Source: Caecitellus pseudoparvulus (lineage: Eukaryota > Protista > Bigyra: Bicosoecida). Taken from it: a stretch of DNA of 48,219 nt. The notes under the pieces are model-generated. The model was not told the DNA's origin. It saw only the letters and a program-made list of their open reading frames with translations, and ran no database searches. This document shows, piece after piece, positions 5,188-48,219 of this stretch. Location of the stretch: positions 1 to 48,219 of the forward strand of contig CBFFRQ010000114.1 of the NCBI GenBank assembly GCA_965644315.1, in the 5' to 3' direction. The position numbers and the translations under genes were made by a program. Position 1 is the first letter of the stretch. Each line of letters begins with the position of its first letter.

Positions 5188-5211
5188 AAGTTGGTCCGTG
5201 AGTCGCTTTGA
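2..5211 (+). CDS. Sel1-like repeat (SLR) protein, 5'-incomplete; tandem units of 4 SLRs joined by (Ala-Pro)n linkers; frameshift in the linker near 1420-1460
   Basis: ORFs 5..1561 and 1495..5211 encode the same repeats with the SLR consensus (G-x-A-x-AQ-x-x-LG-x-MY-x-x-G-x-GV-x-x-D...A-x-x-WY-x-x-AAEQ). The frame switch falls in a low-complexity ccagca linker. Stop TGA at 5209-5211. Confidence 0.9.
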
Positions 5212-5480
5212 ATGTAACGTCACAGATTTTGAAGGAATGAGTGTTCGTGCATCAACAATGTTTCTCTTTGACGCACCGCGTTTGCAAGTCATGTATTGTT
5301 CTTTGCATTGAGCTGAAGAAGTGAGGTGCTGCCTTGGTTTGTCTGTTCCCTTCAAGTGAGAGTTGATGAGTTGTGGAGGAGTTTCTAGGTTTGCTTGTTG
5401 GCGTGCGAGGGGCTTGATGCAGAGCTCGTCAGACTAAATTGGCTTCGTGGCTTCCACTGAGCTGCATTGGGTCAAACTGC

Positions 5481-19622: not shown

Positions 19623-19800
19623 GGTTCGGAAGTTCAATGCATTACAGCCTTTTAGCTATTCGAAATGCATTTCACCTCAGCACCACTTGGCACTGTACAG
19701 GTTAGGAAGTTCAATGCATTGCAACCTCTTGTTTTCAACCACACTCACTTCACACTTGCTCCTCGAGAGAAGCGGGCTGCGGCGCTCGCTTGCGTCGCGC
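19623..19800 (-). mobile_element. Degenerate relics (2-3 stacked) of the retroelement 3'-terminal motif
   Basis: ggttcggaagttcaatgcattaca (19623), ttagctattcgaaatgcatttcacctc (~19652) and ggttaggaagttcaatgcattgca (19700) resemble ggttagctgttcaatgcattgcacttcacctc at 31929. gcggcgctcgct (~19779) also occurs near 32000. Confidence 0.5.
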
Positions 19801-31539: not shown

Positions 31540-31652
31540 AAGCGCCACGTGCTGATGCAAACTGGGCCGCGCTCAAGAGCTCATCAAGGGGTTGGACCGA
31601 ATGAATTTCAGGACTCAACCGCCATACACAGAGTGAATCAATTGTGGTGACG

Positions 31653-31683
31653 AATTTCGACTCGCTGATCATGAGTCGAAATT
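31653..31683. repeat. Short inverted repeat (11-bp arms)
   Basis: aatttcgactc - gctgatcat - gagtcgaaatt. Confidence 0.8.
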
Positions 31684-31712
31684 TGGAACTGAGATTGATT
31701 TACTCTGTTGAG

Positions 31713-31826
31713 CTTGTGTTTCCCGCCAAAATTAGTTGAAAATATTCAAAGTAATTGAGACTACATTATATAGAGTAGTCTCAATTACTTAGAAAATTTT
31801 CAATTAATTTTGGCGGGAATCACAAG
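31713..31826. repeat. 114-bp AT-rich palindrome (52-bp arms, 4 mismatches, 10-nt loop)
   Basis: Left arm cttgtgtttcccgccaaaattagttgaaaatattcaaagtaattgagactac (31713-31764) versus the reverse complement of 31775-31826. Confidence 0.95.
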
Positions 31827-31919
31827 ATATTTTAAGTATTTCAATTCAAATATTTCTTACCATAATAGTCTTAATTCTTTAAATTCACTAATTACTTTTT
31901 ATTTCCACTAAGTAACAAA

Positions 31920-31934
31920 TTAGGGTTAGGTTAG
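31920..31934 (+). repeat. Interstitial telomeric repeat at the 3' junction of retroelement copy 1
   Basis: TTAGGGTTAGGTTAG lies directly before ctgttcaatgcattgca. Confidence 0.8.
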
Positions 31935-32736
31935 CTGTTCAATGCATTGCACTTCACCTCCACGCTTGCAACTTGCGCGGTTCGGCTTGGGCGTCACATG
32001 CGGCGCTCGCTGCCGTGCACGAATGCACTGCAGAAGCGCCACAGCGGCTTCCACTTGCGTGGATCTGCAACCAACACAGTCTTGCGACCGTTGTAGAGGT
32101 CACCGCTAGCTAGGGCGTGTCCTACGCCCGCCCCAAGGGGAGAAAGTCCCGTCCTTGGCCAGCTTGAACCACACCACAGAGAGTTCATCCAGGTGGCGCG
32201 CTCGTCAATCAGCACTTCACATCATAATCCAACTCACTTCTCTGCACCATTCTTCATGCTTGTTGCCTTCGACATGCCTGCTGCCGCGAGAGAACCTTGC
32301 GGGGCAACTGCAGGCCGTTGTGAGGGAGGGGTGCTGCTGTGGCGTTTCGCTCGAAACGCCGCGGCAGCGGAGGGACCGCCTGGCGCACGAGTGCGCGCCG
32401 CAGCACCCCTTCCCTTCCACAGGATACTTTCTTCATATCAAGGTCAAACTTCTCTTGCACTTGGATGCTGAGTCCGGAGCCGGTGAGTCTTTGCCTGCGG
32501 CGCCGCGCGTGGGACGTCCGTACGTCAAGCACGGCTTGTTCCACCCGCGTTGCCGCAGGGCTTCTTCGAGGACTTCAGGAGGCTCCATCATCGTCAGGTA
32601 AGTGCCCGTGGACCATTCGTTCAGCAATTTCTCCTCCTTTCGCAGAGCTATTCGTCAATCATCAGGGGGAGCTTCAGCAGGGGCGCTGCTTCGCAGGAGG
32701 GTGACCGTGGTTGTCACCACGACAAACGTAAGCCTG

Positions 32737-35700
32737 CTACTGCCCGCCTGCCCCCTCTGCTGCCCCTCCTCCACTCTCAGGACCATCTCCCATGGAAGTG
32801 GACTGTCTTCCTTGGACCAGGCCGTGATTAAACAAGGTGGACTGCTGGGAGAAGGACCGGGGTGGCCCGCGCTGTGAGCGGTCAGGGAAGTACGTACGCT
32901 GTGTCCTCCGCGTGCGCACATCTCGAGTCTGCCTGTTCACAGCACTGGGCACCGGCTTCGTGTAGCCCGGAAAAGGACAGGTACGGCCATGAGCTGCCCA
33001 CCAGAGGTACCTTGCGTGCCGCTGGACGTGCACGTGCTCTGGCGAGGTAAGTCTGAGCATGCGCTGCAGCACAATGTCCCACGCAGATGAAGCGAAGCCA
33101 GCCCCAGCCTGGAGCAGCTTCTTCCAGAAGGCTGGGGGCTTGACTGGACCACGAGTGGAGCGAAGGCGGAGGTGGGGGTGGCTCATGACAGCCGCCCCTT
33201 CAGGACTCCACAGTTGCTGCGCAGGATCCTCATCGATGCGGAAGGGCCATTGGCCACACAAGAGCAGGCGGAGAAGGAGCTTGGAGGACGATCGAGGGAG
33301 GGCACTCCGGGACTTCGCCGACTGGAGGGCGCGAGTCAGGGGGGCAGGGATGGTCAAAAGAGCGGAGGGGTGCCCACCTTGGGCCACGCTGTTGGACTGG
33401 GCCGCGGTGGCCAGCATGGCTGCCAAGGCATCCTGTCTGGCCTCGTCTAAGGCTGGGTGGCGGCACGAGAGCAAGACGTGCTCGTGCAGCGTGGCCCAGG
33501 AGACACTCCCGCAGAGTGGACACTCCTCAAAGAGTGTCGGGGTGTCTTCGCCATGGAAAAGCTGAAGGGTTTGCCAGAGATGGACCTTCACAACCTGTGG
33601 CCGGTTGCCCTCGCACACCCATAGCAATGGGCTTGGGGCTGACGGGATGGGGTGGAGCCAGCAGAAGAACCGAGCCCCCACACCCACATGGTACGGCCGT
33701 GGGCGACGCACACGGTGCAGGTCACCAGTGGGGGAGTACCCGAGAGCGGGGCACTCGGACGACTGGGCGATGTGCAAGAAGGAGCACACGACATGCTGTC
33801 GGGCGCGCCACGACATGTCGGCAGGGAAGTCCGGGGGCAGCATCAAGCTGGAGGAGGAGGATGCAGCCAGCCCAAGGTACTTGATCTTGGGTGGTGTGGG
33901 ATCCAGATCCAGCGTATCCGTCACGCTGTCGTCTGATGAAGTGTCCGCATTCCCGTCTCTCTGAACCAACTGCTCGAGGGCACTGCGGCTTGGCAGGCAG
34001 CCGTGCAACCACAAGTCGAACAGACCATGAAGGGCGAAGGGGGGCGGGATGCCCGACCGTGCCCGATCCAGGTCACCGTTCAGGTTGACGAGGAACTCCA
34101 TCGTGACTGGGGAGGGGAGCATGTCGAGCGCAATCGGCAGGGTCTGCAGCATGACCCTCGCTACTGGTGTCCCGGCGTGAAGATCGGAGATGAGCTTGCG
34201 GAAGATGTTCGAGCGCAGCTTGGTGGCGCGTATGTGTGCAGGTAGGAAGCCGCACACGGCAAGTTTTGCATAGTTATGCATCCTTGCCAGGGAACTTTGC
34301 ATGCCGATCTGGGTCTTGCTCAGAGCAGTAGCGAGGCCCCGGTCCACTTCGCGCAGGGGAAGGACAGAGTTGCGGACCTGAGTAGCCAGTATGTAGTCCG
34401 CCGCTGCCGTGATGGAGGCACTACCAATACGCTGCTTGAGGTCAATGCCCACCCACTCGCCAGTGAGCAGAGCACTGCAGGCAAACCCTGCTTGCGTGCA
34501 GGAAAGACTGGCCTGCTTGAGAGCAGAGGCCCGTGTCTTGCGGACATCTTCACACAGAGGGGCACCAAGGAAGACATAGCTGCGTGTTCGCTCGATGGGA
34601 ACGCCACCGACGGTGAGTGTCTTTCCAGACTTTAGCCATCTGGATCGCCAAATTGCCTTGCGCCTCTCGTTCGCACAGACTCCGTTGACTGGTGCTGCGT
34701 TGGTAATCACCATAATGCCTGACTTCCTTGGGTTGATCTTCAAGCCAACACGTGCTCCCACAGCCCGCACTTCATGAAACATTCTTTGCATCGCAGATGG
34801 GGACGTGGCCAAGCAAGCAAGATCGTCGGCATACAGAGTGTGAGTGAGGCGGCCTGCAGATGTAGGCACCCCAGCTCCGGCGTATCCCTGTCCAGGGAGT
34901 TCTTGGAGGCGCTGGGACAGAACATCGATGGCGACTTTAAAGAGTAAGGGTGACAGGGCGCCACCCTGAGGGACGCCGCTTGTGACAGGGAGGGGATCGC
35001 ACAGTCCGTGGGCCGTGTGGATGGAGACACTGGCCCGAGACATGTACTCTGACACAGCCTTGAGCAGGGGCTGAGGCAGTCGGGCAGCTTCAAGGATCTC
35101 AAGGATTGCAGCATGGCTGACCGAGTCGAACGCTGCCTTAAAGTCGATGAACATGACAAGGACGTGCTTGTCTGGTGAGCGTCTGAGGTATCCGTTCGCG
35201 GCTTCTTGAAGAGCAATGATTTGCTCGTGTGTGTTGCGTGACTTGCTGAACCCTGCTTGCTCTCGCGAGATCCAAGATTTCATCCATGCTTCCACACAGG
35301 CCGCGACGACGGAGAAGAACAACTTAGCTTGTGGAGGCCGACAGACGATCAGCCTGTACGTGTCCACGCGTCCAGGTCGGCTAGACTTCTTGGGAATGAG
35401 TGTGCCTACACCCTCGTGGTACTTTGCAGGACAGGACCCGTGAGCCAGTGTGTCCAGCAGGGCTTGGGTGTACCTTTCCTTGAAGGCCAGGCTTGAGTAC
35501 TTCAGGTGTTCAGCTTGAAACTGGCCTGTTCCAGGATTGCGGTGCAAGTTGAGAGCATCGATGGCTGACATGACCGTTCGCTTCGTGGGCAGCCAGACTT
35601 CTGGGGGGCGAAACTCTTCATGCTTGGAGGGCAGCAGCCTTGCAAGCCCAAACCGCAGAGGGGTTAGAGCTGTCACATCTGGGCTGATGATCGCTGCCAT

Positions 35701-38700
35701 CTGTTCACGGACAGCTTGTTTTACCGCCGCACTTGCATACACCAGCTTTCCGTCTCCCCCATACACAGACTGAATGGAAGTTGCCCCAATTTTCTTTCGT
35801 CGGCCAGAGAGACGCCTGACATGAACATGGGCAGCGAAGGGATCAGTGAGTGCCAGTTCTTTGATACGCTGCTTGATCTGAGTGACGGAGTGCTTGTGCT
35901 TCTTCTTGAGAAGGTGAGTGCAGCGCCGCATTGACTCTTTTCTCATCCACACAGTATGTGCAAGGTCTTCCGCTATCATACCTCTCTGGTCCTCAAGGAG
36001 ACGGGACATGACAGGATCTGAAGATCTCGCAGTGTTGTGGACCAAAGCAAGGCGTCGATCAATGCGGCATAGCTCACGCCGCAACTTCTTCGCGCGCGCC
36101 GTCATCTTCTTCTTCAGCTTGCTGTACTTCGATACATCGGTGAAGACTTGCAGTACTTCAGGGGATGTTCCTTTGCAGGTGGCGTGTGCTTTCTCAGCCG
36201 CTGCAGCAACCAGCCCGTCCAGCTGGGTCAATGCCTGCTCTTCTTCGGTGCCGGCTGGGGGCAAGGGTGTGGTAGCCTGGGCTTGGTCGAGAAGGTTCCG
36301 GTGAAGCGCTTGCGCTCTTTGGCCTGACGGTGTCGAGGCCGGCCACCATGGCGGGACAGAGTGAGGTCGGGTCAGGCTGTGAGAGGACCTGGTCTCTTTC
36401 GCAAGCTTCACAACCACAGTGGAGGACAGCAAGTAATGGTCGCTGAAGATCAAGTCTGCTTTCCGCTGTCTTCCAGCACTGGAGAACTTTGTCGTGACTT
36501 TCAGGGGACTCGTCATTGTTGTCTTTAGCAGTGGGCACAGAAGGATGTGGTCAAGTGCTCTCTTGTGAGTGGCGTGAGTTGACACACCTGCCCTGCCAGG
36601 GGGTGAGAGACCCGCCACTTGGCAGAGCCTGTCAAGTTCTTGAACATCTTCGTTTGGCTCTGATACGCCGGTCTCATTGACCCATGCCTCTTGCCCCCAG
36701 CACTGCACACCACTGTCACCCGGGTGACAGTTCAGATCCCACATAACCACCATCATGTGCGTATGTTGCAGGGACTCTACGGCAGCGTGCAGTTGTTCCC
36801 AGACCTCCTGCCTATGGGGGAGCTTCGTGTCCGGGTCGGCTAGCGGCTTCTTGCGCTGTGCCGTGTACCAGTTTGGTACGTATGCAGCAATGATAGCAAG
36901 TGGTTTGGGCTTGGCTGGGACTGAACATGCAACGATGCAGCGGCCATCAAGGCCCAGGTCGAGTAGTTGTGTGGCTCCAAGGCGTTTGTCCAGAAGAAGA
37001 GCCACCTCACTTCTCCCTGGTGGTCTGTCAGGTGGGTTGGGTCTAAAGCACTGGAGTCCCACCACCTCAGTGTCAAGGGTCCCATGCCCTCCGGGTTCTG
37101 TCAGGCAGAGTGCAAGCAGGGCGGTGTGGGCTTGAGGGGTTCGTGCACAGTGTATGACCTGGTGAAGGTGGGTTCCACAGGACCGTGCGACGTTCCAGGA
37201 GACGAAGGCCAACTTGGTCAAGCCCTTTCGACCAACAGGGGTGTGTGGGCCCTGGTCCCATCGAGCAGACATTGAGTCCCAACTCTGTGGGATGAACTTT
37301 GCGAGTGGGTCATCGGCCTTGGCTTTCTCCAGCATGGAGGTACTGTGTCGTGTACGTCGTGCTTCTGGAAGGACAACCCGGGTTGCCTTTCCCGCAATGA
37401 GTGTACGCGCATGTGCAGTGCTGTCATTCACCACAAGCGGCAGGGGGGGGTACTCGTCTCGGATGGTCTTGAACGCATCACGCAGTCGATCGCGGAAGGA
37501 CCGTGTGTGACCTGAGAGTGGAGTGACCGCTACTCTGTACACAGTGGTTACCCCTTCCGTATGTAGCCGGATCAGACACTTGTGTAAGGGAAGTTCTGAG
37601 GTAGAGCTTGGCAAATCTGGGTTCCACATGTGAAGCACACCATGGTCATGGTCAATGAGGAGAAGCTGAAGGTGGGCACTATGCGCCTTGGATGGAATGG
37701 TCAAGGCAAAGGCAAAGTACACATCCTCAAAGTAGTCCTCCTGCCGTTCGTCCTCCATCACAGCTCGGACATCAAGCTGACTGCTCGGTAGGAGGTCTGC
37801 GCCCTTCAGCGCCTTGTGACCGTTGTTGATGTGCTGCATGAGCAGGTGTAAGCCGGGAAGGAGGACAGGCGGGGATGCAGCTGACAGCAGGGAGTCTTCA
37901 GGTGCAAAGCGCACCAGGAGTTTGCGAAAGGCCGTCAGATCATCCGGTGCCGCATCCACCTCCCCGCTCCCAGTTCTGGTGACGGGGACGACATCGGAGT
38001 CAGGTGTTTGTGGGGCTGCCATGCCTGCAGAGGCCTTGATGTTGCCCATCGCATGTTGGGCTGCAGCAATGGTTGCTGCGTGATGAAGAAGAGCGAGGTC
38101 ATCTTGCTGCAAGATTGGTTCACCGGCAGCAGTCTCAAGACAGGCCTGTACGCAGTGTCTGTCCTCAGTGTTACTGTACACATGGTCAGAGGACAGGAGG
38201 TCACACAGCTTTGTGTGGTGCTTGATAGACCGTTTCGGTAGGCATGCCGGCACTCGAGGACACGCAGCAAGTTCAACCACTTTGGTTGGGGGCTGGGCAG
38301 GAGCTGCAGCTGCTTTCGGTTCAGGCCCAGTTGTTGTGGGGGGTGCCTTCGGGCTTGGGAAGAGCTGGTCCCATCGCGTGGCTGTGCCCTTGCTGACTCG
38401 AGACGTTGGAAGGGCCACGTCGGCCTTGGTGCGTGGTGGGGTGGTACATGCAGGCGGGCTCGGCTTGGGGGAACCTCTGCCTTCCTCAGACGGAGCAGGC
38501 TCGCTCTTGAACAGGCCAGCAAAGGTGCGGTGGCGCTTGGGTTCCTTCTTTCCTTTTCGCAGGCCTCGCCGCACCTTCTTCTGCCTTCTGCCATCCTTCA
38601 GTGCTTGGGTGTGAGGCTGGGCCTCCTTGGCTGTACTTTCACCGACAGGGGCGTCTCCCTCAGAGGGGACGGAATGTCCGGTGGCATTGTACATGGTCTT

Positions 38701-39260
38701 TGGCTGGGATCGTTGTGCAGCCAGGGAAGTCTTGACAAGGTTCACCACTGATGCAACGTTGCCAGTGGTTTGTGCGAGTATGGTGGCCTGATCATGCACA
38801 CGCTCAGCTGCCTTGAGCACAGAGGTCGGCGCCACAACTCGAACCTTGGCCCGCGCGCTGGCAAACTGCTTGGTCTTGACAAACGCCACAGAGATGCTGC
38901 CTCCCCCCTGAAGGTAGACAGTGGCGTCGTCTGCAGTAGCAGCAGCCTCGCGCAGACATTGGGCAAGCCTCGGGCTGTCTCCAGTGCTACTCATAGACAC
39001 AAGCAGGGCAGGGACAGAGCCAGGAGAGTGACGCAGTGCCGCGCTAGCGCGGGCAAGTTCCGCACACAGCCCTGGGAACGTAGTGTCTACCCCGTCTCCG
39101 TACATCTCCAGCCATTTGTCACGGAAGGTTGAAGCTTTTGTTGCTGTTGTTGATTCCTCCAGTCCAGGAAGTACTCCACCCAGCTCGAACGTGCGCGCGG
39201 CTCCGCGGCGCGGCATGTCAGCAAACACTCCTGTTCTTGGCGCGCGCACTGGCTCTGCTA
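32737..39260 (-). CDS. Retrotransposon polyprotein (putative Cys protease, APE endonuclease, RT, CCHC knuckle); N-terminus continues at 41194-41318
   Basis: APE motifs SWNV, CLTE, AYVP, WDLN, LDHIL and SDH (~36430-37215). RT motifs YRLI, QAGF, FIDFKAAFDSV, GVPQGGALSPLLF, YADD (~34822), GLKINPRKS and YVFLG. Knuckle CPLC-x10-H-x4-C. Confidence 0.93.
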
Positions 39261-41193
39261 GGTCTCGTGAAACCCTGCAATAAGGGCAAATGTAGGACAA
39301 ACTGATATAAGGTCTAGCACTATGCTCAACATTCTTAGAGCAATTTTGCGTTCTTGGAGGTTTTGCGCAACAAGACCCGGCGGGGGGGCTTCGCCAAAAT
39401 TCAAATACTTCAAATTTGAGTTTTTTGTTTGATGGTGCCGTTGGCCGTTGGCGTTACGGGCACCGAAAGAAAACGGCCAATCACCCAAGGCCGTCTACCT
39501 CTTTCAGAATAAGCGCTGGCTCAAAAATTTCACGCAATTCATGGCCAACCTCAAGCTTTCTCATAACTTCCGCCATTTGTTCGCCCGGTTTCCTCTTCCA
39601 AGCCGAATTCTCACCCAGTGGTGATGGCGACGAAACGAGACCGATCCGGCGCCCCGTTGCGAACGGCCACAGCTGTCCCGGAAAGGTCGTCACGCGGAAT
39701 AGCTCAAGGAATTCTTGAAGCAAGTGCCCACATGATGAACCTTGGTGCGGCCTCACTTGTCACAGGGCAGTCGTTGCTTGTACACTCGGTGCATGCCTTG
39801 GCAGGCCAGCTTCGAGCCGAAGGCTACACCCGCAGGGATCAGCGGGAAGCGAAGTTCGGAGCAGCAAAAGGCAGAGGTAGGCTTCGTAGGATCAAGCCAC
39901 TTGTCATTCGCCAGTCTATTGAAGCGACGCTGCAGAACCCGAGGCACTGTTGGAGGTTAACGGGGATGAACGCAGAGATGTACAGGCACTTCTCTGACGA
40001 AGTCCAGAGAGCTCTCGTAAAGGCCAAAAACATGCAAACCAAGCAGCACTCAGCCTTTGTACGGATTTTCATTTGCATTTCCCAGCTCCGTGGGCACCCT
40101 CCTGCCGCTCTGGCGATCATTACGAAGATGCCGGAAGGATCTATGCATGGGATCTTCCGGGAGGTGATTCCCTTCGTCCTCTCTGTTGCCACCAGAAATT
40201 TGATGCTCAAGATACCCGAAGATCAGCGGGACGTGTCTCACGGGATTTTTGGCGGCGCACTTGGCCGTGTTGTCGGGGCAGTGGATGGGGTAACCATCCC
40301 GATGCAAGCGATGCCGGGCCGACCCCAATCCCACTACAACGTCCACCACAAGATTCCAGGTTACGACTTCCTGCTTGTGACAGACCTCACTGGAGTTCCC
40401 TTGGCTATTTTTGAGATGGGGCCTGGATCACAGTCTGAAGTTGCGGCGGCGTCAGACGCGGTGCGAACCCTGCGCCGCCATGGAGTCATGGAGCCAGGCG
40501 ATCTGCTGCTAGGAGATGCATTGTACTGGCACTCCAACAAGCACATTGTAGCGGGAGACAAGCCATCCCACCTCAAACAGTGGGCCGACAAGATCACCCA
40601 GCACATTGAGGCTGGGTGGGAGGATGCCGAAGAGCTCGAGAGGCTGCGCATGGCGTCTGGGATGCTGCTTAGCTTGGATCTGCGAACGGAGATGATAAGC
40701 AGCGCAAGGCTTGTAGTGGAGAACTGCAACAACGTCATCTGGGACTGGGACTCCTCTGGGTTTTACGATTCCGCGTTGTACGGCATCCTGTTGGCCATTC
40801 GGGGTTGTTGAGTGGGGTTGGGAACCATGCTGGCTCCCGCCAGCCGGATGGGCGGCCATCTGGAAAGAATCCAAGCCAAAACTAAAGTCCGTAGTACTGG
40901 GATAAGTTGTGCAGCTTTTAGTATGCTCTGAGTTGGATTTGAGTGAAGTATCATTTTATTCCTGCAAACCGATTTCCGCAATTCTCACTTGCCAATCACT
41001 ACGACCTACAGCAAAACCTGCATCAGGCTGGCGAGTGCAAGCGATTGATTCCGCATGAAGTACATATCGATCAGTTTTTGGTGGGGTTCCCAACTCAAAT
41101 ATCCCAAGAATCCTCATTTCGCCATTTCTGATATAAGCCTGAACTCCTACAGTAGTCAATCAGCAATTTCTTACTGTAAGGTTTCACGAGACC
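39261..41193 (+). mobile_element. IS5/PIF-Harbinger-superfamily (ISL2-like) DNA transposon, 1933 bp, 24-bp TIRs, TA target duplication
   Basis: Left TIR ggtctcgtgaaaccctgcaataag (39261-39284) and right TIR cttactgtaaggtttcacgagacc (41170-41193) match at 21/24 positions, with the outer 14 bp perfect. TA flanks at 39259-60 and 41194-95. Single transposase ORF. Confidence 0.92.
39624..40811 (+). CDS. DDE transposase (DDE_Tnp_4-like) with an N-terminal HTH
   Basis: Triad motifs GAVDG, LLGDALY and RLVVEN, plus GPGS and HYNVHHK. HTH-like region RLTGM...RIFICISQLR...LAIITKMPEGSMHGI. Confidence 0.88.
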   Translation: MATKRDRSGAPLRTATAVPERSSRGIAQGILEASAHMMNLGAASLVTGQSLLVHSVHALAGQLRAEGYTRRDQREAKFGAAKGRGRLRRIKPLVIRQSIEATLQNPRHCWRLTGMNAEMYRHFSDEVQRALVKAKNMQTKQHSAFVRIFICISQLRGHPPAALAIITKMPEGSMHGIFREVIPFVLSVATRNLMLKIPEDQRDVSHGIFGGALGRVVGAVDGVTIPMQAMPGRPQSHYNVHHKIPGYDFLLVTDLTGVPLAIFEMGPGSQSEVAAASDAVRTLRRHGVMEPGDLLLGDALYWHSNKHIVAGDKPSHLKQWADKITQHIEAGWEDAEELERLRMASGMLLSLDLRTEMISSARLVVENCNNVIWDWDSSGFYDSALYGILLAIRGC

Positions 41194-41318
41194 TATCTGC
41201 TGCAGCACACTTGGAAACGAAGAGAGCGCCCAGTACTTGGCTGACTTGGACTGCCATGACGATGATGAGAGCGAAGCAGTTGTTTTCAGGTGCAGGCGCC
41301 CGTGAGGGGAGCACACTG

Positions 41319-44300
41319 AGGTTAGACAGTCAATGCATTGCAATTCGCTTCCACGCTTGCCACAGGCGCGGTGCAGCTGGGGCATCACACGTGGTGTCCT
41401 GCTCACCGTCGCACACGAGTGCGCTCCGGTGTACACCACAGCGGCTACCATGTTAATGGATCTGCAGCCAGCACAGACGTGAGTCCGTTGTATAAGCCGC
41501 CGCTTCGCTAGGGCGTTTCAACGCCCGCCCCTTCGAAAGAAGGTCCACATGCCCGCGAGGGGGCCAGAGCTCGGTCTCTTGGGGGGGTGCGCAGTCAGCG
41601 CCACCCACTCAGACATTCCATCAGCTTACAATTCAACTTCCCCCATTATCCCGGGCCGGTTTCCGACTCGGGCCCGGGACTTCGTCCCACTGTGGGCCCT
41701 ACATGGGCCTCAGTGCCCGGGACAAGTGGGGGCGTTTCGCAGTGGGGCAGTGCACCTGGCAGCATCACACACTGCCTGCCCCGCCGAACACCTGAGGAAC
41801 GCCTTGTTCTTGGTACGTTCCGCGCCCTTTCCGATCCTTTCTGCGCAGGTAAACCCTTGGAGTGCTTGTGGACGGCTTGGATCCTGGTGAGTCCTCTCTG
41901 GCGGCGGCGCGCCTGACGCCCGTGCGTCAAGCACGCCAAGTTCCGCACGCGCCGCTGCAGGGAGACAGCTAGGACTTGTATGGGATCAAGAACCTCCAGG
42001 TAAGCACTGTGACAGCATTTCTTGACCTATTCCTCTCCGCTTCGCAGAGAGAGGTCAACATGAAGGGGGCCGCTTGGGCCCACGTTGCCAAGCCTTCTGG
42101 TTCCATCGTGGTTCTCACCACGCCTTGCAGAATTTCTTTCACAGATCCACGGACGTTCTTCGGAGAGTGCAAGGACTACTCCGAGTCGGATCCCGAACTG
42201 GAAGGACTATCAGGCCTGGAGACACCTACATCGAACAGAGTGGACTGGGTGCTGAAGGAGCGTGGTGCACGCCGTTCAGAGCGCACTGGGTAGTAAGTGC
42301 GCTCGAAGCGCCTCGCCCGCACCCTCGCCGTGTGCTTTCTCACTGCACTCGGCAAGGGTGTGGAGGATCCTGGTAGCGCACTCCCGCGACCATGCGCCGC
42401 CCACCACAGATATCGCGCATGCTTCTGCACAGGTAGGAAGTCCTCAGAGGTAAGTTTCAGCATGCGCTTCACACACTCGTCCCATGCAGATGAGGAATAC
42501 TCAGCCGCCTTCACAAGCATCGTCTTCCAATAGAGTGGAGGAAGGAGAGGACCCTCGGAGTTTCGAAGAGTCAGGTGGGGATTCGACAGCACAGATGCCT
42601 GCTCCCTGGACACATGTTGGAGCTCTGCAGCAGTGCCCCATCGGAATGGCCACTGACCAAGGAGGAGAAAGCGAAGCATGGTCTTGCGCTCTGGTGTGCG
42701 AAGGTACAGACCAGCCTCCCAGCGGCGCAGGGATGCTACCAAGAGTGAAGGGACCCCAACGCGGTGGGGTTGTGGGTTGCTCGACCCTTCCTCTGCAGAA
42801 CGAAGTGTCAGCTGGAGGACGCTTGTCAGGGTTGCTGCTCTGGACTCTGCCAGAGGGGGGTGGGGGCAAGCAAGCAGGATATGCTCATGGAGGCTGGACC
42901 ACATGCGGCTGTGGCACAGCGGGCATTCCCGAAAGAGAGTAGGGAGATCTTCGCCGTGCAGCACTTGTAAGGTCTGCCACAAGTGTACTTTCACGCGTTT
43001 CTGCTGATCTCCTTCACAGATCCAGAGGAGCGGGCTCACTGATGAGGGAATGGGGTGAAGCCAAGCAAACAGTCTTGCACCAGGACCAATGTGGTAAGGC
43101 TTCGGACGTCGTGCGCGCGGAATTTCACTTGCGCAGGAGTAAAGAACCTCGGGGCAGGACACTGTTGTGGCGATGTGCAGGTACGACTCGACAATGTGTT
43201 GTCGTGTGACCCATGGAGTTGAGGCCTCAAACACAGGTGGCCATCGCAGTGAACTTGGCTCTGCTGCAGCAAGGCCGAGAAGCTCAATCTTTGGAGGAGA
43301 TGGGTCCATGCCTTGACAGACATCAACTCCGTCGGTTTGGCCAGCATCTTCTGCATCAGGTTGGGTGCAGTGGTGGGTCATGTCTGCCGTGGCTGGAAGC
43401 GCACCATACAGCCACAGGTCCAGTAGACCATGCAGGGCCCAGGATTCTGGGACGCCGTTTGGGGCTGGCTTGTCAAGTCGAATATTTGTCTTCACAAGAA
43501 ACTGCATGTCTATGGCAGGTGGGAGACACTCGATGGCGTGTGGAAGGGAGTAAAGCAGAGCGAGAGTGGCTGGGGTACTGCGCTTGATCCCTTTCAGGAG
43601 CTTCTTGAAGATATTGACTCTGTGTTTGGTAGCTCGGATGTGTGCTGGTAGCACCCCGCATACGGCAAGCTTGGAGTAGTTGTGCATGCGCAGGAGTGAG
43701 CTCTGCATGCCAAGTTGGGACTTGCTCAGCGCCTTTGCCAGGCCCCTGTCAACGTCCCGGAGTGGGAGTACAGAGTTCCGAACTTGCGTTGCAAGAACAT
43801 AATCTGCTGCACTTGTGATTGAGGCGACGCTCATGCGGTGTTTCAAGGCAACATCCAGCCACACACCACTAAGCAAGGCGCCGCAGGAGAAGCCTGCCTG
43901 GCAGCAAGAGATGCTGGCCTGTCTGATCGCGAGAACTCTGGTGCGGTTGGTGTTGTCTGATAGGGGCGCCCCAAGGTAAGTGTAGCTGCTTGTCCGCTGG
44001 ATAGGGACACCTTTGACCTGCAGCTTTGCGCCTGACTTCAGCCATTTTGACCTCCACAACCCTTTTCGTCGTTCCGTTGCACATACTCCACGATGTGTCG
44101 AGGCACTTGTGACAATCATCACCCCTGATTTCGCTGGGTTGATGGAGAGTCCCACCCGCTCACCAAGAGCTTTCACTTCTTGAAACATTCGAAGCATCGC
44201 AGCAGGGGAGGTGGCGACACATGCCAGATCGTCAGCGTACAGGGTGTGCGTGATGTGGCCGTGGGGCGTTTCGATCCCTGCCCCAGCAATGCCCTGCTGA

Positions 44301-47300
44301 GGGAGCTCATGAAGTCGCTGGGATAGGACGTCAATGGCAATCTTAAACAAGAGAGGTGAGAGTGCACCGCCCTGGGGGACGCCATTTGTGACCGGAATGG
44401 GTTCACAGAGTCCGTGTGCCGTTTGAATGGCAACACTAGCGCGCTTCATGTAGTCCTTGACACATGATAGCAGTGGCTGTGGAAGATTTGCTGCGGTGAG
44501 TATCTCAAGTATGGCTGAGTGGTTGACGGTGTCAAAAGCCCCCTTAAAATCGACGAAGAGTATCATGACGGCCCGGTCAGCTGAGACTCTCACATACTCG
44601 TTAGTCGCTTCCTGGAGGGCAAGAATTTGTTCGTGCGTGTTACGGGTGCGTGTGAAACCCGCCTGCTCTTTGGATATCCACGTCTTCATCCAGTTCTCAA
44701 CGCAGGTTGCAACCAAGGAGAAGAAGAGTTTTGCAGGTGGAGGTCGACAGACAATGAGTCTATATGTGCAGACTTGACCCGGCTGGCTGGTCTTCTTTGG
44801 TATGAGTGTGCCGATCCCTTTATGATAAGAGACTGGTGGCAGGCCTTTCTGCAGTGCCTCGAGCAGGACTCTTGCATACTTCCGCTTCACAGGTAGCGGT
44901 GAGTACTTCAGGTGCTCAGACTGGTATGTTCCAGATCCTGGGCTTCGGTGAAGATTGAGCTTGTCTATGTGTGAGACAACACCGTCTTCCATCGGGAGCC
45001 ATGTGTCTGGAGGCTTGAAGTGAGGGGAGTTCCCAGGAAGGAACCTGGACAGACCAAATTGTAGCGGAACCACCCGATTCTCCTTGGGGCCGATGATTCG
45101 TGTCATCTGTTCGTGGACAGCGCTCTTGACGAGGTGCGGAGAGGTAACGAGGTCGCCTTCTGTGCTATACACTGATTGTAGTGGGACCGCTCTGCCGTGT
45201 CGACGGCGCCCGGATAGTTGGCGTATGTGCGTGTGTGCAGCAAATGGGTCAATGTGGATCAGTTCACGGAGTCTCTGTTTGACTTGATGGAGTGCAGTTC
45301 GGTGTTTCTTCGCAGCAAGTCTTGAGCATCTTCTCATCGCCTGTTTTCGTTGTCGTTGCGTTCCATCAATGTCTTCCTGTAGCATCTGTTGGTGCTCCCA
45401 CACACGTCTTGCTTTGGTGCGTTGCTCCTCTTCTGATGAGTTCATCAGAAGGGTGTGGCGTCGCTGGGTGCGAGCCAGCACTTTTCGCATTCGTGCCACT
45501 CTGGCTGTCAGCTTCTTCTTCAAGGCACTGAACTTTCGAACATCTGTGAGAACTTGGAGCTGTTCTTTGGTTGATGCCTTGCAGCATGAGTGTGCTTCAT
45601 GAGCAGTGTGTCCAATGATTGCATCCAGTTCAGAGAGGTGTGCCGAAGGGTTTGTTGGGGGTGTAGCTGAGGCAATGTGAATGGCCCGATTTACAGCAGT
45701 CTTGAAGTATAGCTGTGCTTTGACTCCTGCTTGCGATGAGGAAGGCCACCAAGGTGGGGCAGAGGCTTGGCCTCGGGGCAGGCGCTGTTGCTTCAGTGGG
45801 CCGTGTAACCTCACAACCACAGAAGCCGAGAGAAGGTGGTGGTCACTGAAGGCCAACTTGGATGGATCCCGTTTTCCAGCTCGCGAGAACGTGGTGGTTA
45901 CTTTCAGCGAGTGTTTGATGTGGGCAGCAAGCCTGGGGCACACGAGAATATGGTCAAGAGCCCGCTTGAAGGATGCTTGTGTTGAGTGTCCGCTCTTGCC
46001 CGCCGGTCGTAGTTCTCCTTCCCTACACAGGGTGTCAAACACCTCAACGTCTACAGTTGGGTCGGGTACTCCTGTCTTGTTCTCCCAGGCGTCAGAACTC
46101 CAGCATGTCATACCAGAGTCTCCTGGGTGGCAGTTCAAGTCTCCCATGAGCACTATCATGTGAGTGTGGCGCAGGGACTGCACCGCATCGGAGAGCTGTT
46201 CCCATACTTCCTGTCGATGGGGAAGTTTGGTGTCGGGATCCGCGAGCGCCTTCTTACGCTGAGCAGTATGCCAGTTCGGAACGTATGCACCAATGACAGC
46301 GAGAGGGAGTGGTGTACACGGAATGGAGCACGCCACCAAGCAACGTCCATCAATGCTAAGTCCTGTCAGGGGGGACGCATTAAGCCGACGGTCAAGTAGC
46401 ATGGCGACCTCACTCCTTCCGTGGGGCCGTTGAGGTGGGCTTGGACGAAAGCATTGAAGCCCAAGCACTTCCGTGTCCAGATCTCCACGGCCACCAGGCT
46501 CAGTAAGACACATGACCAAGCGGGCCGATCGGTTGATCACTGATCGCGCACACATGATCAGTTCATGCAGGTGGTTGCCACCTGAGCTTGCCACATTCCA
46601 CGAGACAAGTCCCACGTGCGTGGTGGATGTCCGCCCGATGGGTGTATGGGGACTTTGTGCCCAGGTTTGGCCGTGCGCTGGGATCGAAACAGGAAGAAGT
46701 TTACGAAGCGGATCATTTGTCCTGACATGCTCAGCAGTGGCTGTTTGCCTCCTGGTTGTCCTTCCACATGGCAAGACAACTCGGGTCGCTTTGCTGGCGA
46801 TGTATGTCTTCATGTGGACTGTCCCGTCTTCATCTACGAAGGGGATCGGTGGGTATCGTTCCTTCAGGTTGGCGATTGCTTGCTTCATCCGATCTCGCAG
46901 AGGAGCAGGAGAGCCGGTGGGCTTTGACACTGAGACCCTGTACAGAGTTGTAATTCCTTCTGAGTACAGGCGCTCAAAGCAGTTTGTGATGGGGACGGCA
47001 GTGCTTTGTGTTGGCTCATCCGGATTCCACATCACAAGTAGGTCTCGCTCTGTGTCTACCAAGACAAGCATGAGGTGAGCTGTATCAGATCCTTCCGGTG
47101 CGGAGAGTGCAAACGAGAAGTGCACATCCTCAAAGAACTTCGCATGGTTGCTTTCCTTTCGCACAGAGTTGATGTTGACTTCTCCTTTGAGCGATGGTGA
47201 CTCGCCATGTAGTTGCTTGTAGCCTCGGTTGAGTTCTTCTAGGAGAATGTGAAGACCAGGAAGAAGGACGGGGGGTGTTGATGATCGCAGTGATGAGTCG

Positions 47301-48110
47301 GGTGGAGAGAAGCGTTCAAGCAGTCGAGCAAAGAGAGCAAGGTTGTCTTCTTTCTGTAGAGCAGGGGGGGATCCAGCTGGGTTGATTGCCTGGACGTCAG
47401 AGTCGGATGAGTCATGTGTGTCCTCCAGCTTCTTGCTCTTCAGTGACAGGTATGCACGCCTTGCGCCCTGAATCGCGGCTGCATGGTGCAGCATGACAAG
47501 GTCTTCTGCTTGCAGGAACTGTTCACCGGCAGCTGATTCGATGCACGCTTGCACACAGTGCAGTCCGTCTTTGTTCCCAAAGACATGGCTTCCTGACAGA
47601 AGTGGGGCGACGAGGTTTCCTTCTTGAAGGGGATGCTTCGGAAGAACGCCTGGCTGTCGGGAGCAGTCCTGGAGCTTCAGTATATGTGTCCGACAGCGAT
47701 GGCCCGGAGTCTCTGTTGCACAGGATGCAGCAGCTCCAGACTGCTCTTGCTTGGCATGCATCTCCTCCACAGGTGGTGACATGGCCTCAGAGCATTGCGG
47801 GCTCGAAGGAGCAGGTGGTGGCGATGAGCTATGGGGGAACAGCTTGTCCCATCGTGTGCCTGCTCCGGAGCGTACACGTGAGGAGGGAAGTGTCTCATGG
47901 AGAGGCTCAGGTTTGGGAGAGGTAGTTGGCGCTCGTTTTGCAGTGACGAAGACTCCTTTGCCACTGGTGCTCCTGTCCTCAGGTGGGGTTTTGAAGAGGT
48001 CAGCAAACGTGCGCCGTGGTGCTTGAAGACTTGACGGAGATGCTTGCTGCCTCTTGCCACGTCTTGTTTTCTTTCGATGGCCGTCTTGCATGATTGGTTT
48101 GTCTTTCCCA
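41319..48110 (-). mobile_element. Telomere-associated non-LTR retrotransposon, copy 2 (diverged subfamily, 5'-truncated)
   Basis: 3' end aggttagacagtcaatgcattgca at 41319-41342, a ~0.85 kb 3' UTR and an intact APE+RT ORF. The 5' end is cut at 48110 where copy 3 begins. Confidence 0.9.
42176..48091 (-). CDS. Retrotransposon polyprotein (putative Cys protease, APE, RT, CCHC), N-terminally truncated
   Basis: SWNV, CLTE, GDLN, LDHIL, SDH; FVDFKGAFDTV, GVPQGGALSPLLF, YADD (~44228); CPLC...H...C. The first Met (MQDGHRKK) aligns to internal KDGRRQKK of copy 1. Confidence 0.93.
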   Translation of the reverse strand: MQDGHRKKTRRGKRQQASPSSLQAPRRTFADLFKTPPEDRSTSGKGVFVTAKRAPTTSPKPEPLHETLPSSRVRSGAGTRWDKLFPHSSSPPPAPSSPQCSEAMSPPVEEMHAKQEQSGAAASCATETPGHRCRTHILKLQDCSRQPGVLPKHPLQEGNLVAPLLSGSHVFGNKDGLHCVQACIESAAGEQFLQAEDLVMLHHAAAIQGARRAYLSLKSKKLEDTHDSSDSDVQAINPAGSPPALQKEDNLALFARLLERFSPPDSSLRSSTPPVLLPGLHILLEELNRGYKQLHGESPSLKGEVNINSVRKESNHAKFFEDVHFSFALSAPEGSDTAHLMLVLVDTERDLLVMWNPDEPTQSTAVPITNCFERLYSEGITTLYRVSVSKPTGSPAPLRDRMKQAIANLKERYPPIPFVDEDGTVHMKTYIASKATRVVLPCGRTTRRQTATAEHVRTNDPLRKLLPVSIPAHGQTWAQSPHTPIGRTSTTHVGLVSWNVASSGGNHLHELIMCARSVINRSARLVMCLTEPGGRGDLDTEVLGLQCFRPSPPQRPHGRSEVAMLLDRRLNASPLTGLSIDGRCLVACSIPCTPLPLAVIGAYVPNWHTAQRKKALADPDTKLPHRQEVWEQLSDAVQSLRHTHMIVLMGDLNCHPGDSGMTCWSSDAWENKTGVPDPTVDVEVFDTLCREGELRPAGKSGHSTQASFKRALDHILVCPRLAAHIKHSLKVTTTFSRAGKRDPSKLAFSDHHLLSASVVVRLHGPLKQQRLPRGQASAPPWWPSSSQAGVKAQLYFKTAVNRAIHIASATPPTNPSAHLSELDAIIGHTAHEAHSCCKASTKEQLQVLTDVRKFSALKKKLTARVARMRKVLARTQRRHTLLMNSSEEEQRTKARRVWEHQQMLQEDIDGTQRQRKQAMRRCSRLAAKKHRTALHQVKQRLRELIHIDPFAAHTHIRQLSGRRRHGRAVPLQSVYSTEGDLVTSPHLVKSAVHEQMTRIIGPKENRVVPLQFGLSRFLPGNSPHFKPPDTWLPMEDGVVSHIDKLNLHRSPGSGTYQSEHLKYSPLPVKRKYARVLLEALQKGLPPVSYHKGIGTLIPKKTSQPGQVCTYRLIVCRPPPAKLFFSLVATCVENWMKTWISKEQAGFTRTRNTHEQILALQEATNEYVRVSADRAVMILFVDFKGAFDTVNHSAILEILTAANLPQPLLSCVKDYMKRASVAIQTAHGLCEPIPVTNGVPQGGALSPLLFKIAIDVLSQRLHELPQQGIAGAGIETPHGHITHTLYADDLACVATSPAAMLRMFQEVKALGERVGLSINPAKSGVMIVTSASTHRGVCATERRKGLWRSKWLKSGAKLQVKGVPIQRTSSYTYLGAPLSDNTNRTRVLAIRQASISCCQAGFSCGALLSGVWLDVALKHRMSVASITSAADYVLATQVRNSVLPLRDVDRGLAKALSKSQLGMQSSLLRMHNYSKLAVCGVLPAHIRATKHRVNIFKKLLKGIKRSTPATLALLYSLPHAIECLPPAIDMQFLVKTNIRLDKPAPNGVPESWALHGLLDLWLYGALPATADMTHHCTQPDAEDAGQTDGVDVCQGMDPSPPKIELLGLAAAEPSSLRWPPVFEASTPWVTRQHIVESYLHIATTVSCPEVLYSCASEIPRARRPKPYHIGPGARLFAWLHPIPSSVSPLLWICEGDQQKRVKVHLWQTLQVLHGEDLPTLFRECPLCHSRMWSSLHEHILLACPHPPLAESRAATLTSVLQLTLRSAEEGSSNPQPHRVGVPSLLVASLRRWEAGLYLRTPERKTMLRFLLLGQWPFRWGTAAELQHVSREQASVLSNPHLTLRNSEGPLLPPLYWKTMLVKAAEYSSSAWDECVKRMLKLTSEDFLPVQKHARYLWWAAHGRGSALPGSSTPLPSAVRKHTARVRARRFERTYYPVRSERRAPRSFSTQSTLFDVGVSRPDSPSSSGSDSE

Positions 48111-48208
48111 AGGGTTAGCTACTCAATGCATTGCAGATTGCCTCCATGCAGGCTACATCATGGTACAGCTTGGGCTTGGACATGTGGTGCCACCTGCGCC
48201 ACTCCTTT
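48111..48208 (-). mobile_element. Retrotransposon copy 3: ~100-bp 3'-terminal stub
   Basis: agggttagctactcaatgcattgca...cctcca...gcttgggc...acatgtggtgc aligns with the first ~80 nt of copy 1 (ggttagctgttcaatgcattgca...cctcca...gcttgggc...acatgcggcgc). Confidence 0.8.
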
Positions 48209-48219
48209 GGTTAGGGTTA
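48209..48219 (+). repeat. Start of a probable terminal TTAGGG telomere tract
   Basis: The window ends in GGTTAGGGTTA. Only about 1.8 repeats are visible. Confidence 0.6.

What the first reader, a model, noticed from the sequence alone, without database searches (positions are those of the whole stretch)
31920..48219. Head-to-tail array of poly(A)-less APE-RT retrotransposons ending in telomere-complementary CTAACC, apparently added serially to a chromosome end
Seen in sequence: three family members are on the minus strand. Each 3' end reads GGTTAG-N4-TCAATGCATTGCA on the + strand (31929, 41320, 48113), preceded by TTAGGGTTA, GA and AG respectively. There is no poly(A)/poly(T) and no visible TSD. 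Each copy is 5'-truncated and directly abutted by the next copy's 3' end, and the last stub is capped by GGTTAGGGTTA at the window end. Established knowledge: this polarity (3' end centromere-proximal, G-rich strand as primer) is that of Drosophila HeT-A/TART, silkworm TRAS, Magnaporthe MoTeR and Athena/Terminon Penelope-like elements. The RNA terminus ...CUAACC(CUAA) resembles the vertebrate telomerase template CUAACCCUAAC. Inference: the RNA 3' end anneals to a TTAGGG 3' overhang or to a freshly healed end, the RT extends the chromosome, and telomerase re-caps truncated copies. A single-ORF APE-type LINE working this way in a TTAGGG protist may be undescribed.
Basis: partly seen in the sequence, partly recalled or inferred. 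Interest (0 to 1): 0.92.

Follow-up and report, generated by a model that had tools for sequence, protein, structure and literature searches.

The report
Telomere-specific retrotransposon array at chromosome end
The last 16 kb of this contig is a chromosome end built from stacked copies of a previously undescribed group of jumping genes that live only at telomeres of a marine protist, end in a telomere-matching six-letter tag instead of a poly(A) tail, and coexist with ordinary telomerase repeats.

Summary
Three minus-strand LINE copies end at 31929, 41320 and 48113 in GGTTAG-N4-TCAATGCATTGCA, with no poly(A). Each is 5'-truncated and abuts the next copy. They belong to three families: two autonomous APE+RT+CCHC elements (52% aa identity) and a 90-bp stub of an abundant 2.93-kb RT-less partner.

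Genome-wide, 84 of 84 copies of the motif lie within 30 kb of a contig end, all with the 3' end inward. Other ends carry (TTAGGG)x40-271, and a TERT gene is present. An independent metagenome scaffold holds a full-length copy flanked by telomere repeats on both sides.

Of 57 distinct 3' junctions, 40% have no telomere repeat beyond the hexamer, including joints to unique host DNA. A third of repeat-bearing joints are one G out of register, against 0.6% in bulk tracts. This fits priming from exposed G-strand 3' ends on an RNA ending in CUAACC.

The APE domain is under strong purifying selection (dN/dS 0.03), so a nicking route is not excluded.

The RT forms its own long-stemmed clade, with about five relatives among 1.8 billion proteins. 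I found no paper describing it.

This scan already reported the same system on other contigs of this genome. I rate it a new variant of a known kind.

The parts
31920..31928 (+). Nine letters of telomere repeat (TTAGGGTTA) between unique AT-rich subtelomeric DNA and the first element. They are one G out of register with the element's hexamer.
31929..41319 (-). Copy 1, family 'CTGT': an autonomous single-ORF LINE. It lacks about 155 nt of the 5' UTR and carries a nested DNA transposon.
   Evidence: 97% nt identity to the full-length metagenome copy L057 positions 210-7669; Pfam APE and RT
31929..32736 (-). The 808-nt 3' UTR of copy 1. On the RNA strand it ends TGCAATGCATTGA-ACAG-CTAACC. The last 140 nt can be aligned across six families, with covarying hairpins.
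32737..39216 (-). Intact ORF of copy 1, 2159 aa. Order of regions: N-terminal region (1-665), APE (about 663-932), RT (about 1263-1532), C-terminal region with a CX2C..H..C knuckle. No RNase H and no REL domain.
   Evidence: dN/dS 0.13 for the whole ORF, 0.027 for APE, 0.053 for RT against L057
39259..41195 (+). Nested DDE_Tnp_4 DNA transposon with 26-nt terminal inverted repeats and a 5-bp target duplication (TCTGC at 39254-39258 and 41196-41200). It sits in the 5' UTR of copy 1, about 40 nt upstream of the ATG.
   Evidence: empty site seen in L057
41320..48112 (-). Copy 2, family 'ACAG': an autonomous LINE truncated inside the N-terminal coding region. The open frame is 48091..42176 (1971 aa, APE and RT).
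   Evidence: contigs of other samples continue at least 847 nt past 48111
48113..48202 (-). A 90-bp stub (3' end only) of the abundant 2.93-kb RT-less partner, family 'CTAC'.
48203..48219 (+). Filler TCCTTTG running into GGTTAGGGTTA, the start of a telomere tract, at which point the contig stops.
19623..20455 (-). Internal fossil of an older chromosome end. Two short stubs (27 and 50 nt) and 756 bp of the 3' end of a fourth family ('GAAG') are stacked directly after the stop codon of a host LRR gene, with no telomere repeat.

Best explanation
SHOWN. Window 31920-48219 is the terminal retrotransposon array of a chromosome end. It belongs to a lineage-restricted clade of single-ORF non-LTR retrotransposons with this domain order: N-terminal domain, APE endonuclease, RT, CCHC knuckle.

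In this genome the clade is found only at chromosome ends. It is always head-to-tail with the 3' end toward the centromere. There are at least six 3'-end families plus a very young 2.93-kb partner that encodes only the N-terminal domain. The elements have no poly(A). Their DNA copies end in a conserved AATGCATT palindrome, 4-5 variable letters, and the hexamer CTAACC, which is the complement of the telomeric G strand.

INFERRED. The RNA ends at or is read from ...CUAACC. Reverse transcription is primed by an exposed 3'-OH of the G-rich strand that pairs with 0-6 nt of that hexamer, often only with the terminal CC.

Most primers carried three or fewer TTAGGG repeats, or none. Candidates are eroded or broken ends, or the 3' end of a cDNA that had just been made.

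Synthesis often stops early, which gives 5' truncation. Telomerase is present and then adds TTAGGG on top, or another element is added. The result is an array like the one in this window.

ODDS. That this is a telomere-dedicated LINE array: about 0.95. That free-end priming of the healing type is the main route: about 0.5. That the conserved APE makes the primer by nicking telomeric duplex: about 0.3. The two routes may coexist.
For: - Position and polarity: 84 of 84 motif copies lie within 30 kb of a contig end with the 3' end inward, and the reversed control pattern has 0 hits.
- RT copies: about 91 matches, nearly all near contig ends.
- Real telomeres: (TTAGGG)x40-271 at other contig ends.
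- Independent sample: metagenome scaffold L057 carries a full-length copy flanked by telomere repeats on both sides.
- Other strains and samples hold the same families with different truncation points and joints.
- Activity: ORFs are intact and under purifying selection. Partner copies with different joints are 100% identical over 800 nt.
- Junction spectrum over 57 distinct joints: 9 with less than the full hexamer, 14 with the hexamer only on non-telomeric DNA, 11 with the hexamer plus out-of-register repeats, 17 with 1.5-4 repeats, 6 with longer tracts.
- Register: 11 of 34 repeat-bearing joints are off by one G, against 7 of 1186 units in bulk tracts, Fisher p 4e-14.
- Joints of unique host DNA to an element with no repeats.
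- The variant hexamer GGTTCG is inherited by two independent insertions.
- A TERT gene is present.
Against: - The APE domain keeps all catalytic motifs in five families that are only 37-61% identical, and it has the lowest dN/dS of the ORF (0.027). That is hard to square with a purely endonuclease-independent life cycle.
- No RNA data exist, so the RNA 3' end is inferred from DNA joints only.
- Short internal tracts could have contracted after insertion, although the identity of the copies argues against long elapsed time.
- Joints are not all independent events. The eight AGTTAG partner dimers look like one unit that has spread.
- For this particular end, only 11 nt of telomere are assembled.
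Confidence: 0.6

Rival explanations
1. Insertion is strictly endonuclease-dependent and site-specific, as in TRAS and SART. The APE nicks the G strand of duplex TTAGGG repeats and TPRT starts there. Joints without repeats arise secondarily, when the RT jumps from one RNA template to the 3' end of another within the same event.
For: - APE catalytic motifs are conserved and dN/dS is 0.027.
- The model has an APE1/L1-EN fold.
- Some elements lie inside long tracts, with x36-x114 repeats on both sides.
- Full-length L057 is flanked by repeats on both sides.
- Precise joints of a full-length 5' end to the next 3' end (AGTTAG dimers) look like end-to-end template jumps.
Against: - Four joints connect unique host DNA directly to the hexamer. 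They cannot be template jumps, because the host gene lies on the opposite strand sense.
- 89% of joints have fewer than 4 repeats proximal to the element, while terminal tracts hold 190-270 repeats.
- Three registers occur at the joint instead of one.
- SART1 needs at least 3 repeats and inserts at one position (PMC7265360).
Confidence: 0.3
2. The arrays are relics spread between chromosome ends by recombination or break-induced replication, and the elements no longer transpose.
For: - Identical composite units recur at several ends: eight AGTTAG dimers with spacing 2927-2928.
- Paralogous LRR genes sit next to arrays on other contigs.
Against: - At least 57 different joints exist.
- ORFs of 2000-2400 aa are intact, with dN/dS 0.13.
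- 24 or more partner copies with different flanks are 100% identical.
- Other samples have different truncation points.
Confidence: 0.05
3. The stacked joints in this window are assembly chimeras of repeated subtelomeric sequence.
For: - The contig is short (48 kb) and ends in repeats.
- The 41319/41320 joint was not checked with reads.
- The X1 unitig covers the 48112/48113 joint by only 28 nt.
Against: - The same architecture occurs at about 52 contig ends and in an independent metagenome scaffold.
- The 5' parts of copies 1 and 2 are unique in the genome, so there is no alternative placement.
Confidence: 0.02

Closest known systems
TRAS1/SART1 of Bombyx mori (R1 clade, APE-type, telomere-repeat-specific LINEs)
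   Same: These are APE-type LINEs confined to telomeric repeats of a host that has telomerase. They include many truncated copies and several families.
   Different: - TRAS and SART have two ORFs and a poly(A) tail.
- They insert at one fixed position of the repeat and need at least 3 repeats (PMC7265360).
- Both orientations exist between the two families.
- Here there is one ORF, no poly(A), a telomere-complementary hexamer, three joint registers, and 40% of joints without any repeat.
- TRAS1 and R1 endonucleases were not among the 50 best structural matches of the APE model.
HeT-A/TART/TAHRE of Drosophila (Jockey clade)
   Same: - Head-to-tail polar arrays with the 3' end toward the centromere.
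- Variable 5' truncation.
- An abundant partner without RT that keeps only the non-enzymatic protein.
- Addition to non-telomeric ends (terminal-deficiency healing in flies; host-DNA joints here).
   Different: - Flies have lost telomerase and telomerase repeats. Here TERT and long TTAGGG tracts coexist with the elements.
- The fly elements end in oligo(A) and have separate gag and pol ORFs.
- The kinship of the RTs was not testable here.
MoTeR1/MoTeR2 of Magnaporthe, FoTeR of Fusarium, Cnl1 of Cryptococcus (CRE-clade, REL-endonuclease elements)
   Same: They lie in TTAGGG telomeres of telomerase-positive microbes. They lack poly(A) and form a two-component system of a long RT element plus a short partner with shared termini.
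   Different: Those elements carry a restriction-like endonuclease C-terminal to the RT and cluster with CRE/SLACS (PMC12857005). Here the endonuclease is an N-terminal APE and no REL motif is present.
Endonuclease-deficient Penelope-like elements (Athena, Coprina, Terminons)
   Same: The 3' ends carry telomere-complementary sequence thought to pair with the G overhang. They sit at chromosome ends with the same polarity. This is from my own knowledge and was not tested here.
   Different: Those elements have a different RT class (PLE, telomerase-like) and no endonuclease. Here the element has a LINE-type RT with a conserved APE.
Endonuclease-independent L1 retrotransposition at dysfunctional telomeres (Morrish et al. 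2007, cited in PMC4700185)
   Same: A LINE RT uses a deprotected chromosome end as primer, and the joints lack target-site duplications.
   Different: That is a laboratory phenomenon in repair-deficient cells with an ordinary dispersed LINE. Here the whole clade is dedicated to chromosome ends and its 3' end matches the telomere.

Membership tests
APE-type non-LTR retrotransposon (LINE) | An APE (Exo_endo_phos) endonuclease N-terminal to the RT, with catalytic residues | tested here: met
   PF03372 hit in both ORFs. Motifs SWN, TEPGG, YVPN, GDLNxH, LDHIL and SDH are kept in 5 families. The AF2 model matches APE1, ExoIII and L1-EN at E about 1e-10.
APE-type non-LTR retrotransposon (LINE) | LINE-type RT, no LTRs, 5'-truncated copies, C-terminal Cys-His knuckle | tested here: met
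   PF00078 at E 1e-31. Best PDB matches are R2Bm RT at 2e-20 and L1 ORF2p at 2e-15. Truncations seen. Motif CPLCG..HEHxLLxC.
APE-type non-LTR retrotransposon (LINE) | Poly(A) or A-rich 3' tail and target-site duplications (typical, not universal) | tested here: not met
   All 3' ends read ...CTAACC with no A run. A target-site duplication cannot be seen in tandem repeats, and none is seen at joints without repeats.
TRAS/SART (R1 clade) | Two ORFs (a gag-like ORF1 with zinc knuckles, plus ORF2) | tested here: not met
   A single 2159-aa ORF. Full-length L057 has only a 317-nt leader before it.
TRAS/SART (R1 clade) | Insertion at one fixed position of the telomeric repeat, with several repeats required | tested here: not met
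   23 of 57 joints have no repeat beyond the hexamer, and three registers occur. The requirement itself is taken from PMC7265360.
TRAS/SART (R1 clade) | RT groups with R1-clade references | not testable with these tools
   No named reference sequences could be obtained. Among 151 RTs the telomeric families form their own clade (SH-like support 100, stem 0.83) whose nearest neighbours are unnamed.
HeT-A/TART/TAHRE | Polar head-to-tail arrays at chromosome ends, with 3' ends proximal | tested here: met
HeT-A/TART/TAHRE | The elements replace telomerase (no TERT, no short-repeat telomere) | tested here: not met
   TERT RBD domain scores 79 bits in a 1389-aa frame. Terminal (TTAGGG)x191-271 tracts exist.
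HeT-A/TART/TAHRE | A non-autonomous partner that encodes only the non-enzymatic protein | tested here: met
   The 2.93-kb CTAC element has a 755-aa frame that matches ORF residues 1-665 only, and it shares the 5' 360 nt and the 3' 215 nt. This is an analogy, not kinship.
MoTeR/FoTeR/Cnl1 (CRE clade) | A restriction-like endonuclease downstream of the RT | tested here: not met
   No PD-(D/E)xK motif or Pfam hit in the 600-aa C-terminal region. An APE is present instead.
Dualen/RandI | Both APE and REL endonucleases plus RNase H in one ORF | tested here: not met
   No RNase H and no REL were detected. The N-terminal domain gives only weak papain-like fold hints.
Penelope-like telomeric elements | PLE-type RT without APE | tested here: not met
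   LINE-type RT with APE.

The most novel reading that the evidence does not exclude
The elements act as a second, RNA-templated end-healing system beside telomerase. Their RT would prime on bare or nearly bare chromosome ends without any nick and use the terminal CUAACC of its own RNA the way telomerase uses its template. It might even copy the last letters repeatedly, which would explain the TTAGG five-letter units next to the joints. The host would tolerate or depend on this for rescuing ends that have lost their repeats. That would be a living functional intermediate between a LINE and telomerase in a free-living protist.
Probability: 0.2. Interest if true: 0.85.

Novelty: new variant of a known kind. 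Interest (0 to 1): 0.66.

Why it matters
Retrotransposons dedicated to telomeres are known from only a handful of lineages: flies, silkworm and other arthropods, a few fungi, rotifers, Giardia and Chlorella. Each case informs the old question of how telomerase and retroelements are related.

This would be an independent origin in a stramenopile flagellate with several unusual features:
- an APE-type LINE that has swapped poly(A) for a telomere-complementary tag;
- several diverged autonomous families and a burst-active RT-less partner;
- arrays on about 50 chromosome ends, side by side with working telomerase.

The organism appears to be culturable and to have several sequenced strains. If so, whether the elements heal bare ends or cut into telomeres can be tested directly.

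The joints to host genes, and the internalised fossil array 28 kb from the end, suggest that the elements take part in subtelomere turnover.

Tried and rejected
Left-end telomere tracts were therefore only seen in the 3-kb loci.
- Searches for other copies of the 5'-most parts of copies 1 and 2 found none in the genome.
- BLAST of the rest of the window against the array found nothing. The internal fossil was found only through the short motif and other loci.
- The perfect palindrome TCAATGCATTGA is not a general genomic motif: 2 sites only.
- The search for homologous proteins with the APE-RT piece alone gave only distant LINEs.
- The protein atlas gave generic LINE clusters with no clade or taxon.
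- The listing of cluster members gave no names.
- P0049 and P0050 are chimeric animal gene models.
- The contigs of P0046, P0045 and P0047 carry no telomere repeats or 3' motif.
- Two metagenome pattern scans, one for the 41319/41320 joint and one for the general 3' motif, found nothing.
- The APE has no PDB hit by sequence. Its fold does not single out TRAS1 or R1 endonuclease.
- The N-terminal domain model (pLDDT 68) gave only weak papain-like and DUB hits, E 0.03-0.4.
- Pfam found nothing in the N-terminal or C-terminal regions.
- The Pfam architecture of the nearest tree neighbours did not name a clade.
- The organism was not identified directly. 'Marine' comes from metagenome holders. 'Probably Cafeteria-like' rests only on earlier notes of many mavirus-like virophages in this genome and is an inference.
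- No RNA run holds the sequence.
Copies were only compared.
Full report
OBSERVATION

The motif GGTTAG-N4-TCAATGCATTGCA is present on the + strand at 31929, 41320 and 48113. None is expected by chance. The letters before the three sites are TTAGGGTTA, GA and AG, as reported.

The window is an entire 48,219-bp contig (C114) of a 30.6-Mb, 215-contig assembly. Its left 31.9 kb carries long intronless host ORFs on the + strand. The right 16.3 kb is the array.

ANATOMY IN THE WINDOW

Two large minus-strand ORFs carry APE (PF03372) and RT (PF00078) domains. They are only 52% identical in protein, so they belong to different families. I name families by the four variable letters in the motif.

Copy 1 (CTGT, 31929-41319):
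- It is 97% identical in DNA to a full-length element on an independent ENA metagenome scaffold, L057 (7,707 nt).
- That element is flanked on both sides by telomere repeats and begins CTTTCCAAATGTCAACC....
- Copy 1 starts at position 210 of L057, while the element there starts at position 55. Copy 1 therefore lacks about 155 nt of leader.
- Its ORF (39216..32737, 2159 aa) is intact.
- A 1,937-bp DDE_Tnp_4 transposon sits in its leader, about 40 nt upstream of the ATG. It has 26-nt inverted repeats and a 5-bp duplication.

Copy 2 (ACAG, 41320-48112):
- It is cut inside the N-terminal coding region.
- Contigs from other samples hold the same element at about 98% identity and run at least 847 nt further.

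Copy 3 (CTAC, 48113-48202):
- It is a 90-bp stub of a 2.93-kb element.
- It is followed by TCCTTTG and then GGTTAGGGTTA, where the contig stops.
- A unitig of run X1 crosses the 48112/48113 joint by 28 nt.

GENOME-WIDE PICTURE

- The motif occurs 84 times, and the reversed control pattern 0 times.
- 69 hits are on the minus strand, 1.3-30 kb from contig starts. 15 are on the plus strand, 1-15 kb from contig ends.
- All 84 therefore point with the 3' end inward, p about 1e-25.
- About 52 contig ends are involved.
- Other ends finish in (TTAGGG)x40-271, and tracts of x36-x114 lie between elements.
- RT matches (about 91) and APE matches (about 42), mostly without stops, are also concentrated near contig ends.
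- A TERT gene is present.

THE FAMILIES

- At least six 3'-end families share the terminal AATGCATT palindrome, 4-5 variable letters and CTAACC.
- The last 140 nt of the 3' UTR can be aligned across all six. The predicted hairpins have 13 pairs with compensatory changes.
- The CTAC element has a defined 5' end (...CATTTGGAAAG on the + strand) that it shares with the CTGT family.
- CTAC encodes only a 755-aa frame homologous to residues 1-665 of the autonomous ORF.
- CTAC copies with different flanks are 100% identical over 800 nt, so they are very young.

THE PROTEIN

- The APE region keeps all catalytic motifs in five families that are 37-61% identical. It folds as an APE1/ExoIII/L1-EN nuclease, pLDDT 77, Foldseek E about 1e-10.
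- Against L057, dN/dS is 0.13 for the ORF, 0.027 for APE and 0.053 for RT.
- The C-terminal region has a CX2C..H..C knuckle but no RNase H or REL motif.
- The conserved N-terminal domain gives only weak papain-like and deubiquitinase fold hints.

JUNCTIONS

I collected 57 distinct 3' joints:
- 9 keep fewer than six letters of the hexamer.
- 14 have just the hexamer (6-8 telomere-like letters) on non-telomeric DNA.
- 11 have the hexamer next to repeats that are out of register.
- 17 have 1.5-4 repeats.
- 6 have longer tracts.

So 40% have no repeat beyond the hexamer and 89% have fewer than four. Terminal tracts, by contrast, hold 190-270 repeats.

Among repeat-bearing joints, 11 of 34 have a unit one G short or long right at the joint. 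In bulk tracts the figure is 7 of 1,186 units, Fisher p 4e-14.

This pattern is what an RNA ending in ...CUAACC would give. Such an RNA has only two terminal C's, which can pair with primers ending in one, two or three G's.

Several joints connect unique host DNA straight to the hexamer:
- window 19622/19623, directly after a stop codon;
- C42:705443 (locus L050);
- C67:18256 (locus L054);
- the right end of C89 (locus L035).
These are documented.

They cannot be template jumps, because the host gene is in the opposite sense to the element RNAs.

Two independent insertions of one subfamily share a variant hexamer GGTTCG. This argues that the hexamer travels with the element rather than being added by telomerase.

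Eight partner dimers join a precise full-length 5' end to TTAG-CTAC. This fits an end-to-end template jump, or spread of a dimer as one unit.

MECHANISM

The data fit reverse transcription primed by an exposed G-strand 3'-OH with 0-6 nt of pairing to the terminal hexamer. The primer is usually an end that has few or no repeats. Telomerase then adds repeats over truncated or complete 5' ends.

Repeat tracts laid over 5' ends are seen. They are also seen in another sample, where the ACAG element stops at 46808 and continues into repeats.

The strong constraint on the APE argues that nicking matters as well. A SART-like strict requirement for repeats (PMC7265360) is nevertheless not met. I put free-end priming as the main route at about 0.5 and nick-primed insertion into telomeric duplex at about 0.3. 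The two may coexist.

RELATIVES AND LITERATURE

- An exhaustive HMMER search of 1.84 billion representatives found only eight proteins at E <= 1e-30. About five are real kin.
- One is a 3,724-aa ORF on a contig of another organism that starts with CCCTAA repeats and has the same polarity.
- Another is a 2,150-aa ORF from a coral metagenome.
- In a tree of 151 RTs, the telomeric families and these kin form one clade with SH-like support 100 and stem 0.83. Its nearest neighbours are unnamed.
- The best solved RTs are R2Bm and human L1 ORF2p.
- Clade placement against named LINE clades could not be done here.
- Seven literature searches and look-ups found no description of such elements. The known fungal telomeric elements are REL-type (PMC12857005).

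CONTEXT

- Runs from several studies, including marine metagenomes, hold the array sequence.
- Earlier notes of this scan report many mavirus-like virophages in the same genome. That suggests a Cafeteria-like bicosoecid, but this is an inference only.
- The scan had already followed up the same system on two other contigs (s1-641841, s1-636067).
- My results agree on the arrays and on the RT-less partner.
- They disagree with the earlier statement that the elements insert only into TTAGGG repeats.

VERDICT

It is an independent, undescribed lineage of telomere-dedicated LINEs. The mechanism of priming remains open.

Noticed in passing
window 39259-41195: A DDE_Tnp_4 (Harbinger/IS5-like) DNA transposon nested in the leader of copy 1. 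It has 26-nt inverted repeats and a 5-bp target duplication (TCTGC), not TA. The empty site is seen in L057. It lies upstream of the ATG, so it does not interrupt the ORF.
   Followed up: yes
window 19623-20455: An internalised fossil chromosome end 28 kb from the present end. Two stubs and 756 bp of a fourth family are stacked directly after the stop codon of an LRR-receptor ORF, with no telomere repeat. Host genes lie distal to it, so the subtelomere must have been extended later.
   Followed up: partly
window 19415-19623; L050 928-1136; L054: The 3' coding end of the LRR-receptor gene has 78%-identical paralogues on C42 and C67, each again followed by a telomeric element 3' end. This looks like a subtelomeric gene family that repeatedly sits as the last gene.
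   Followed up: no
window 37222-38199 (ORF residues about 340-665): A conserved N-terminal domain, kept by the RT-less partner, with invariant CVQAC, AHL and WNPD motifs. Its model gives only weak papain-like, Josephin and USP fold hits (E 0.03-0.4).
   Followed up: partly
window 31929-32068 and equivalents in five other families: The last 140 nt of the 3' UTR can be aligned across six families, with 13 covarying base pairs. The terminal 25 nt (palindrome plus hexamer) are predicted to be unpaired.
   Followed up: partly
L056 (Logan contig, 18.7 kb): A distant relative in another organism: a 3,724-aa ORF with a different 2,100-aa N-terminal part, its APE at most 43% identical to any copy here. 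It lies 7.5 kb from a contig end that starts with CCCTAA repeats, and its 5' end faces the telomere.
   Followed up: partly
L039 about 9300; L003 about 1480; G000:C177:9363-9422: Extremely short stubs (10-37 nt of an element 3' end) embedded in telomere tracts or between elements. They suggest abortive reverse transcription followed by renewed repeat or element addition.
   Followed up: no
window 31650-31920; L017; L035 end; L037: AT-rich islands (GC far below the 60% background) lie directly proximal to the first telomeric joint at several ends.
   Followed up: no
L045 (G000:C18:155162): Another stack of short element stubs with one and a half telomere repeats, about 155 kb from a contig start. 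It may be a second internalised old end. The contig length was not obtained.
   Followed up: no
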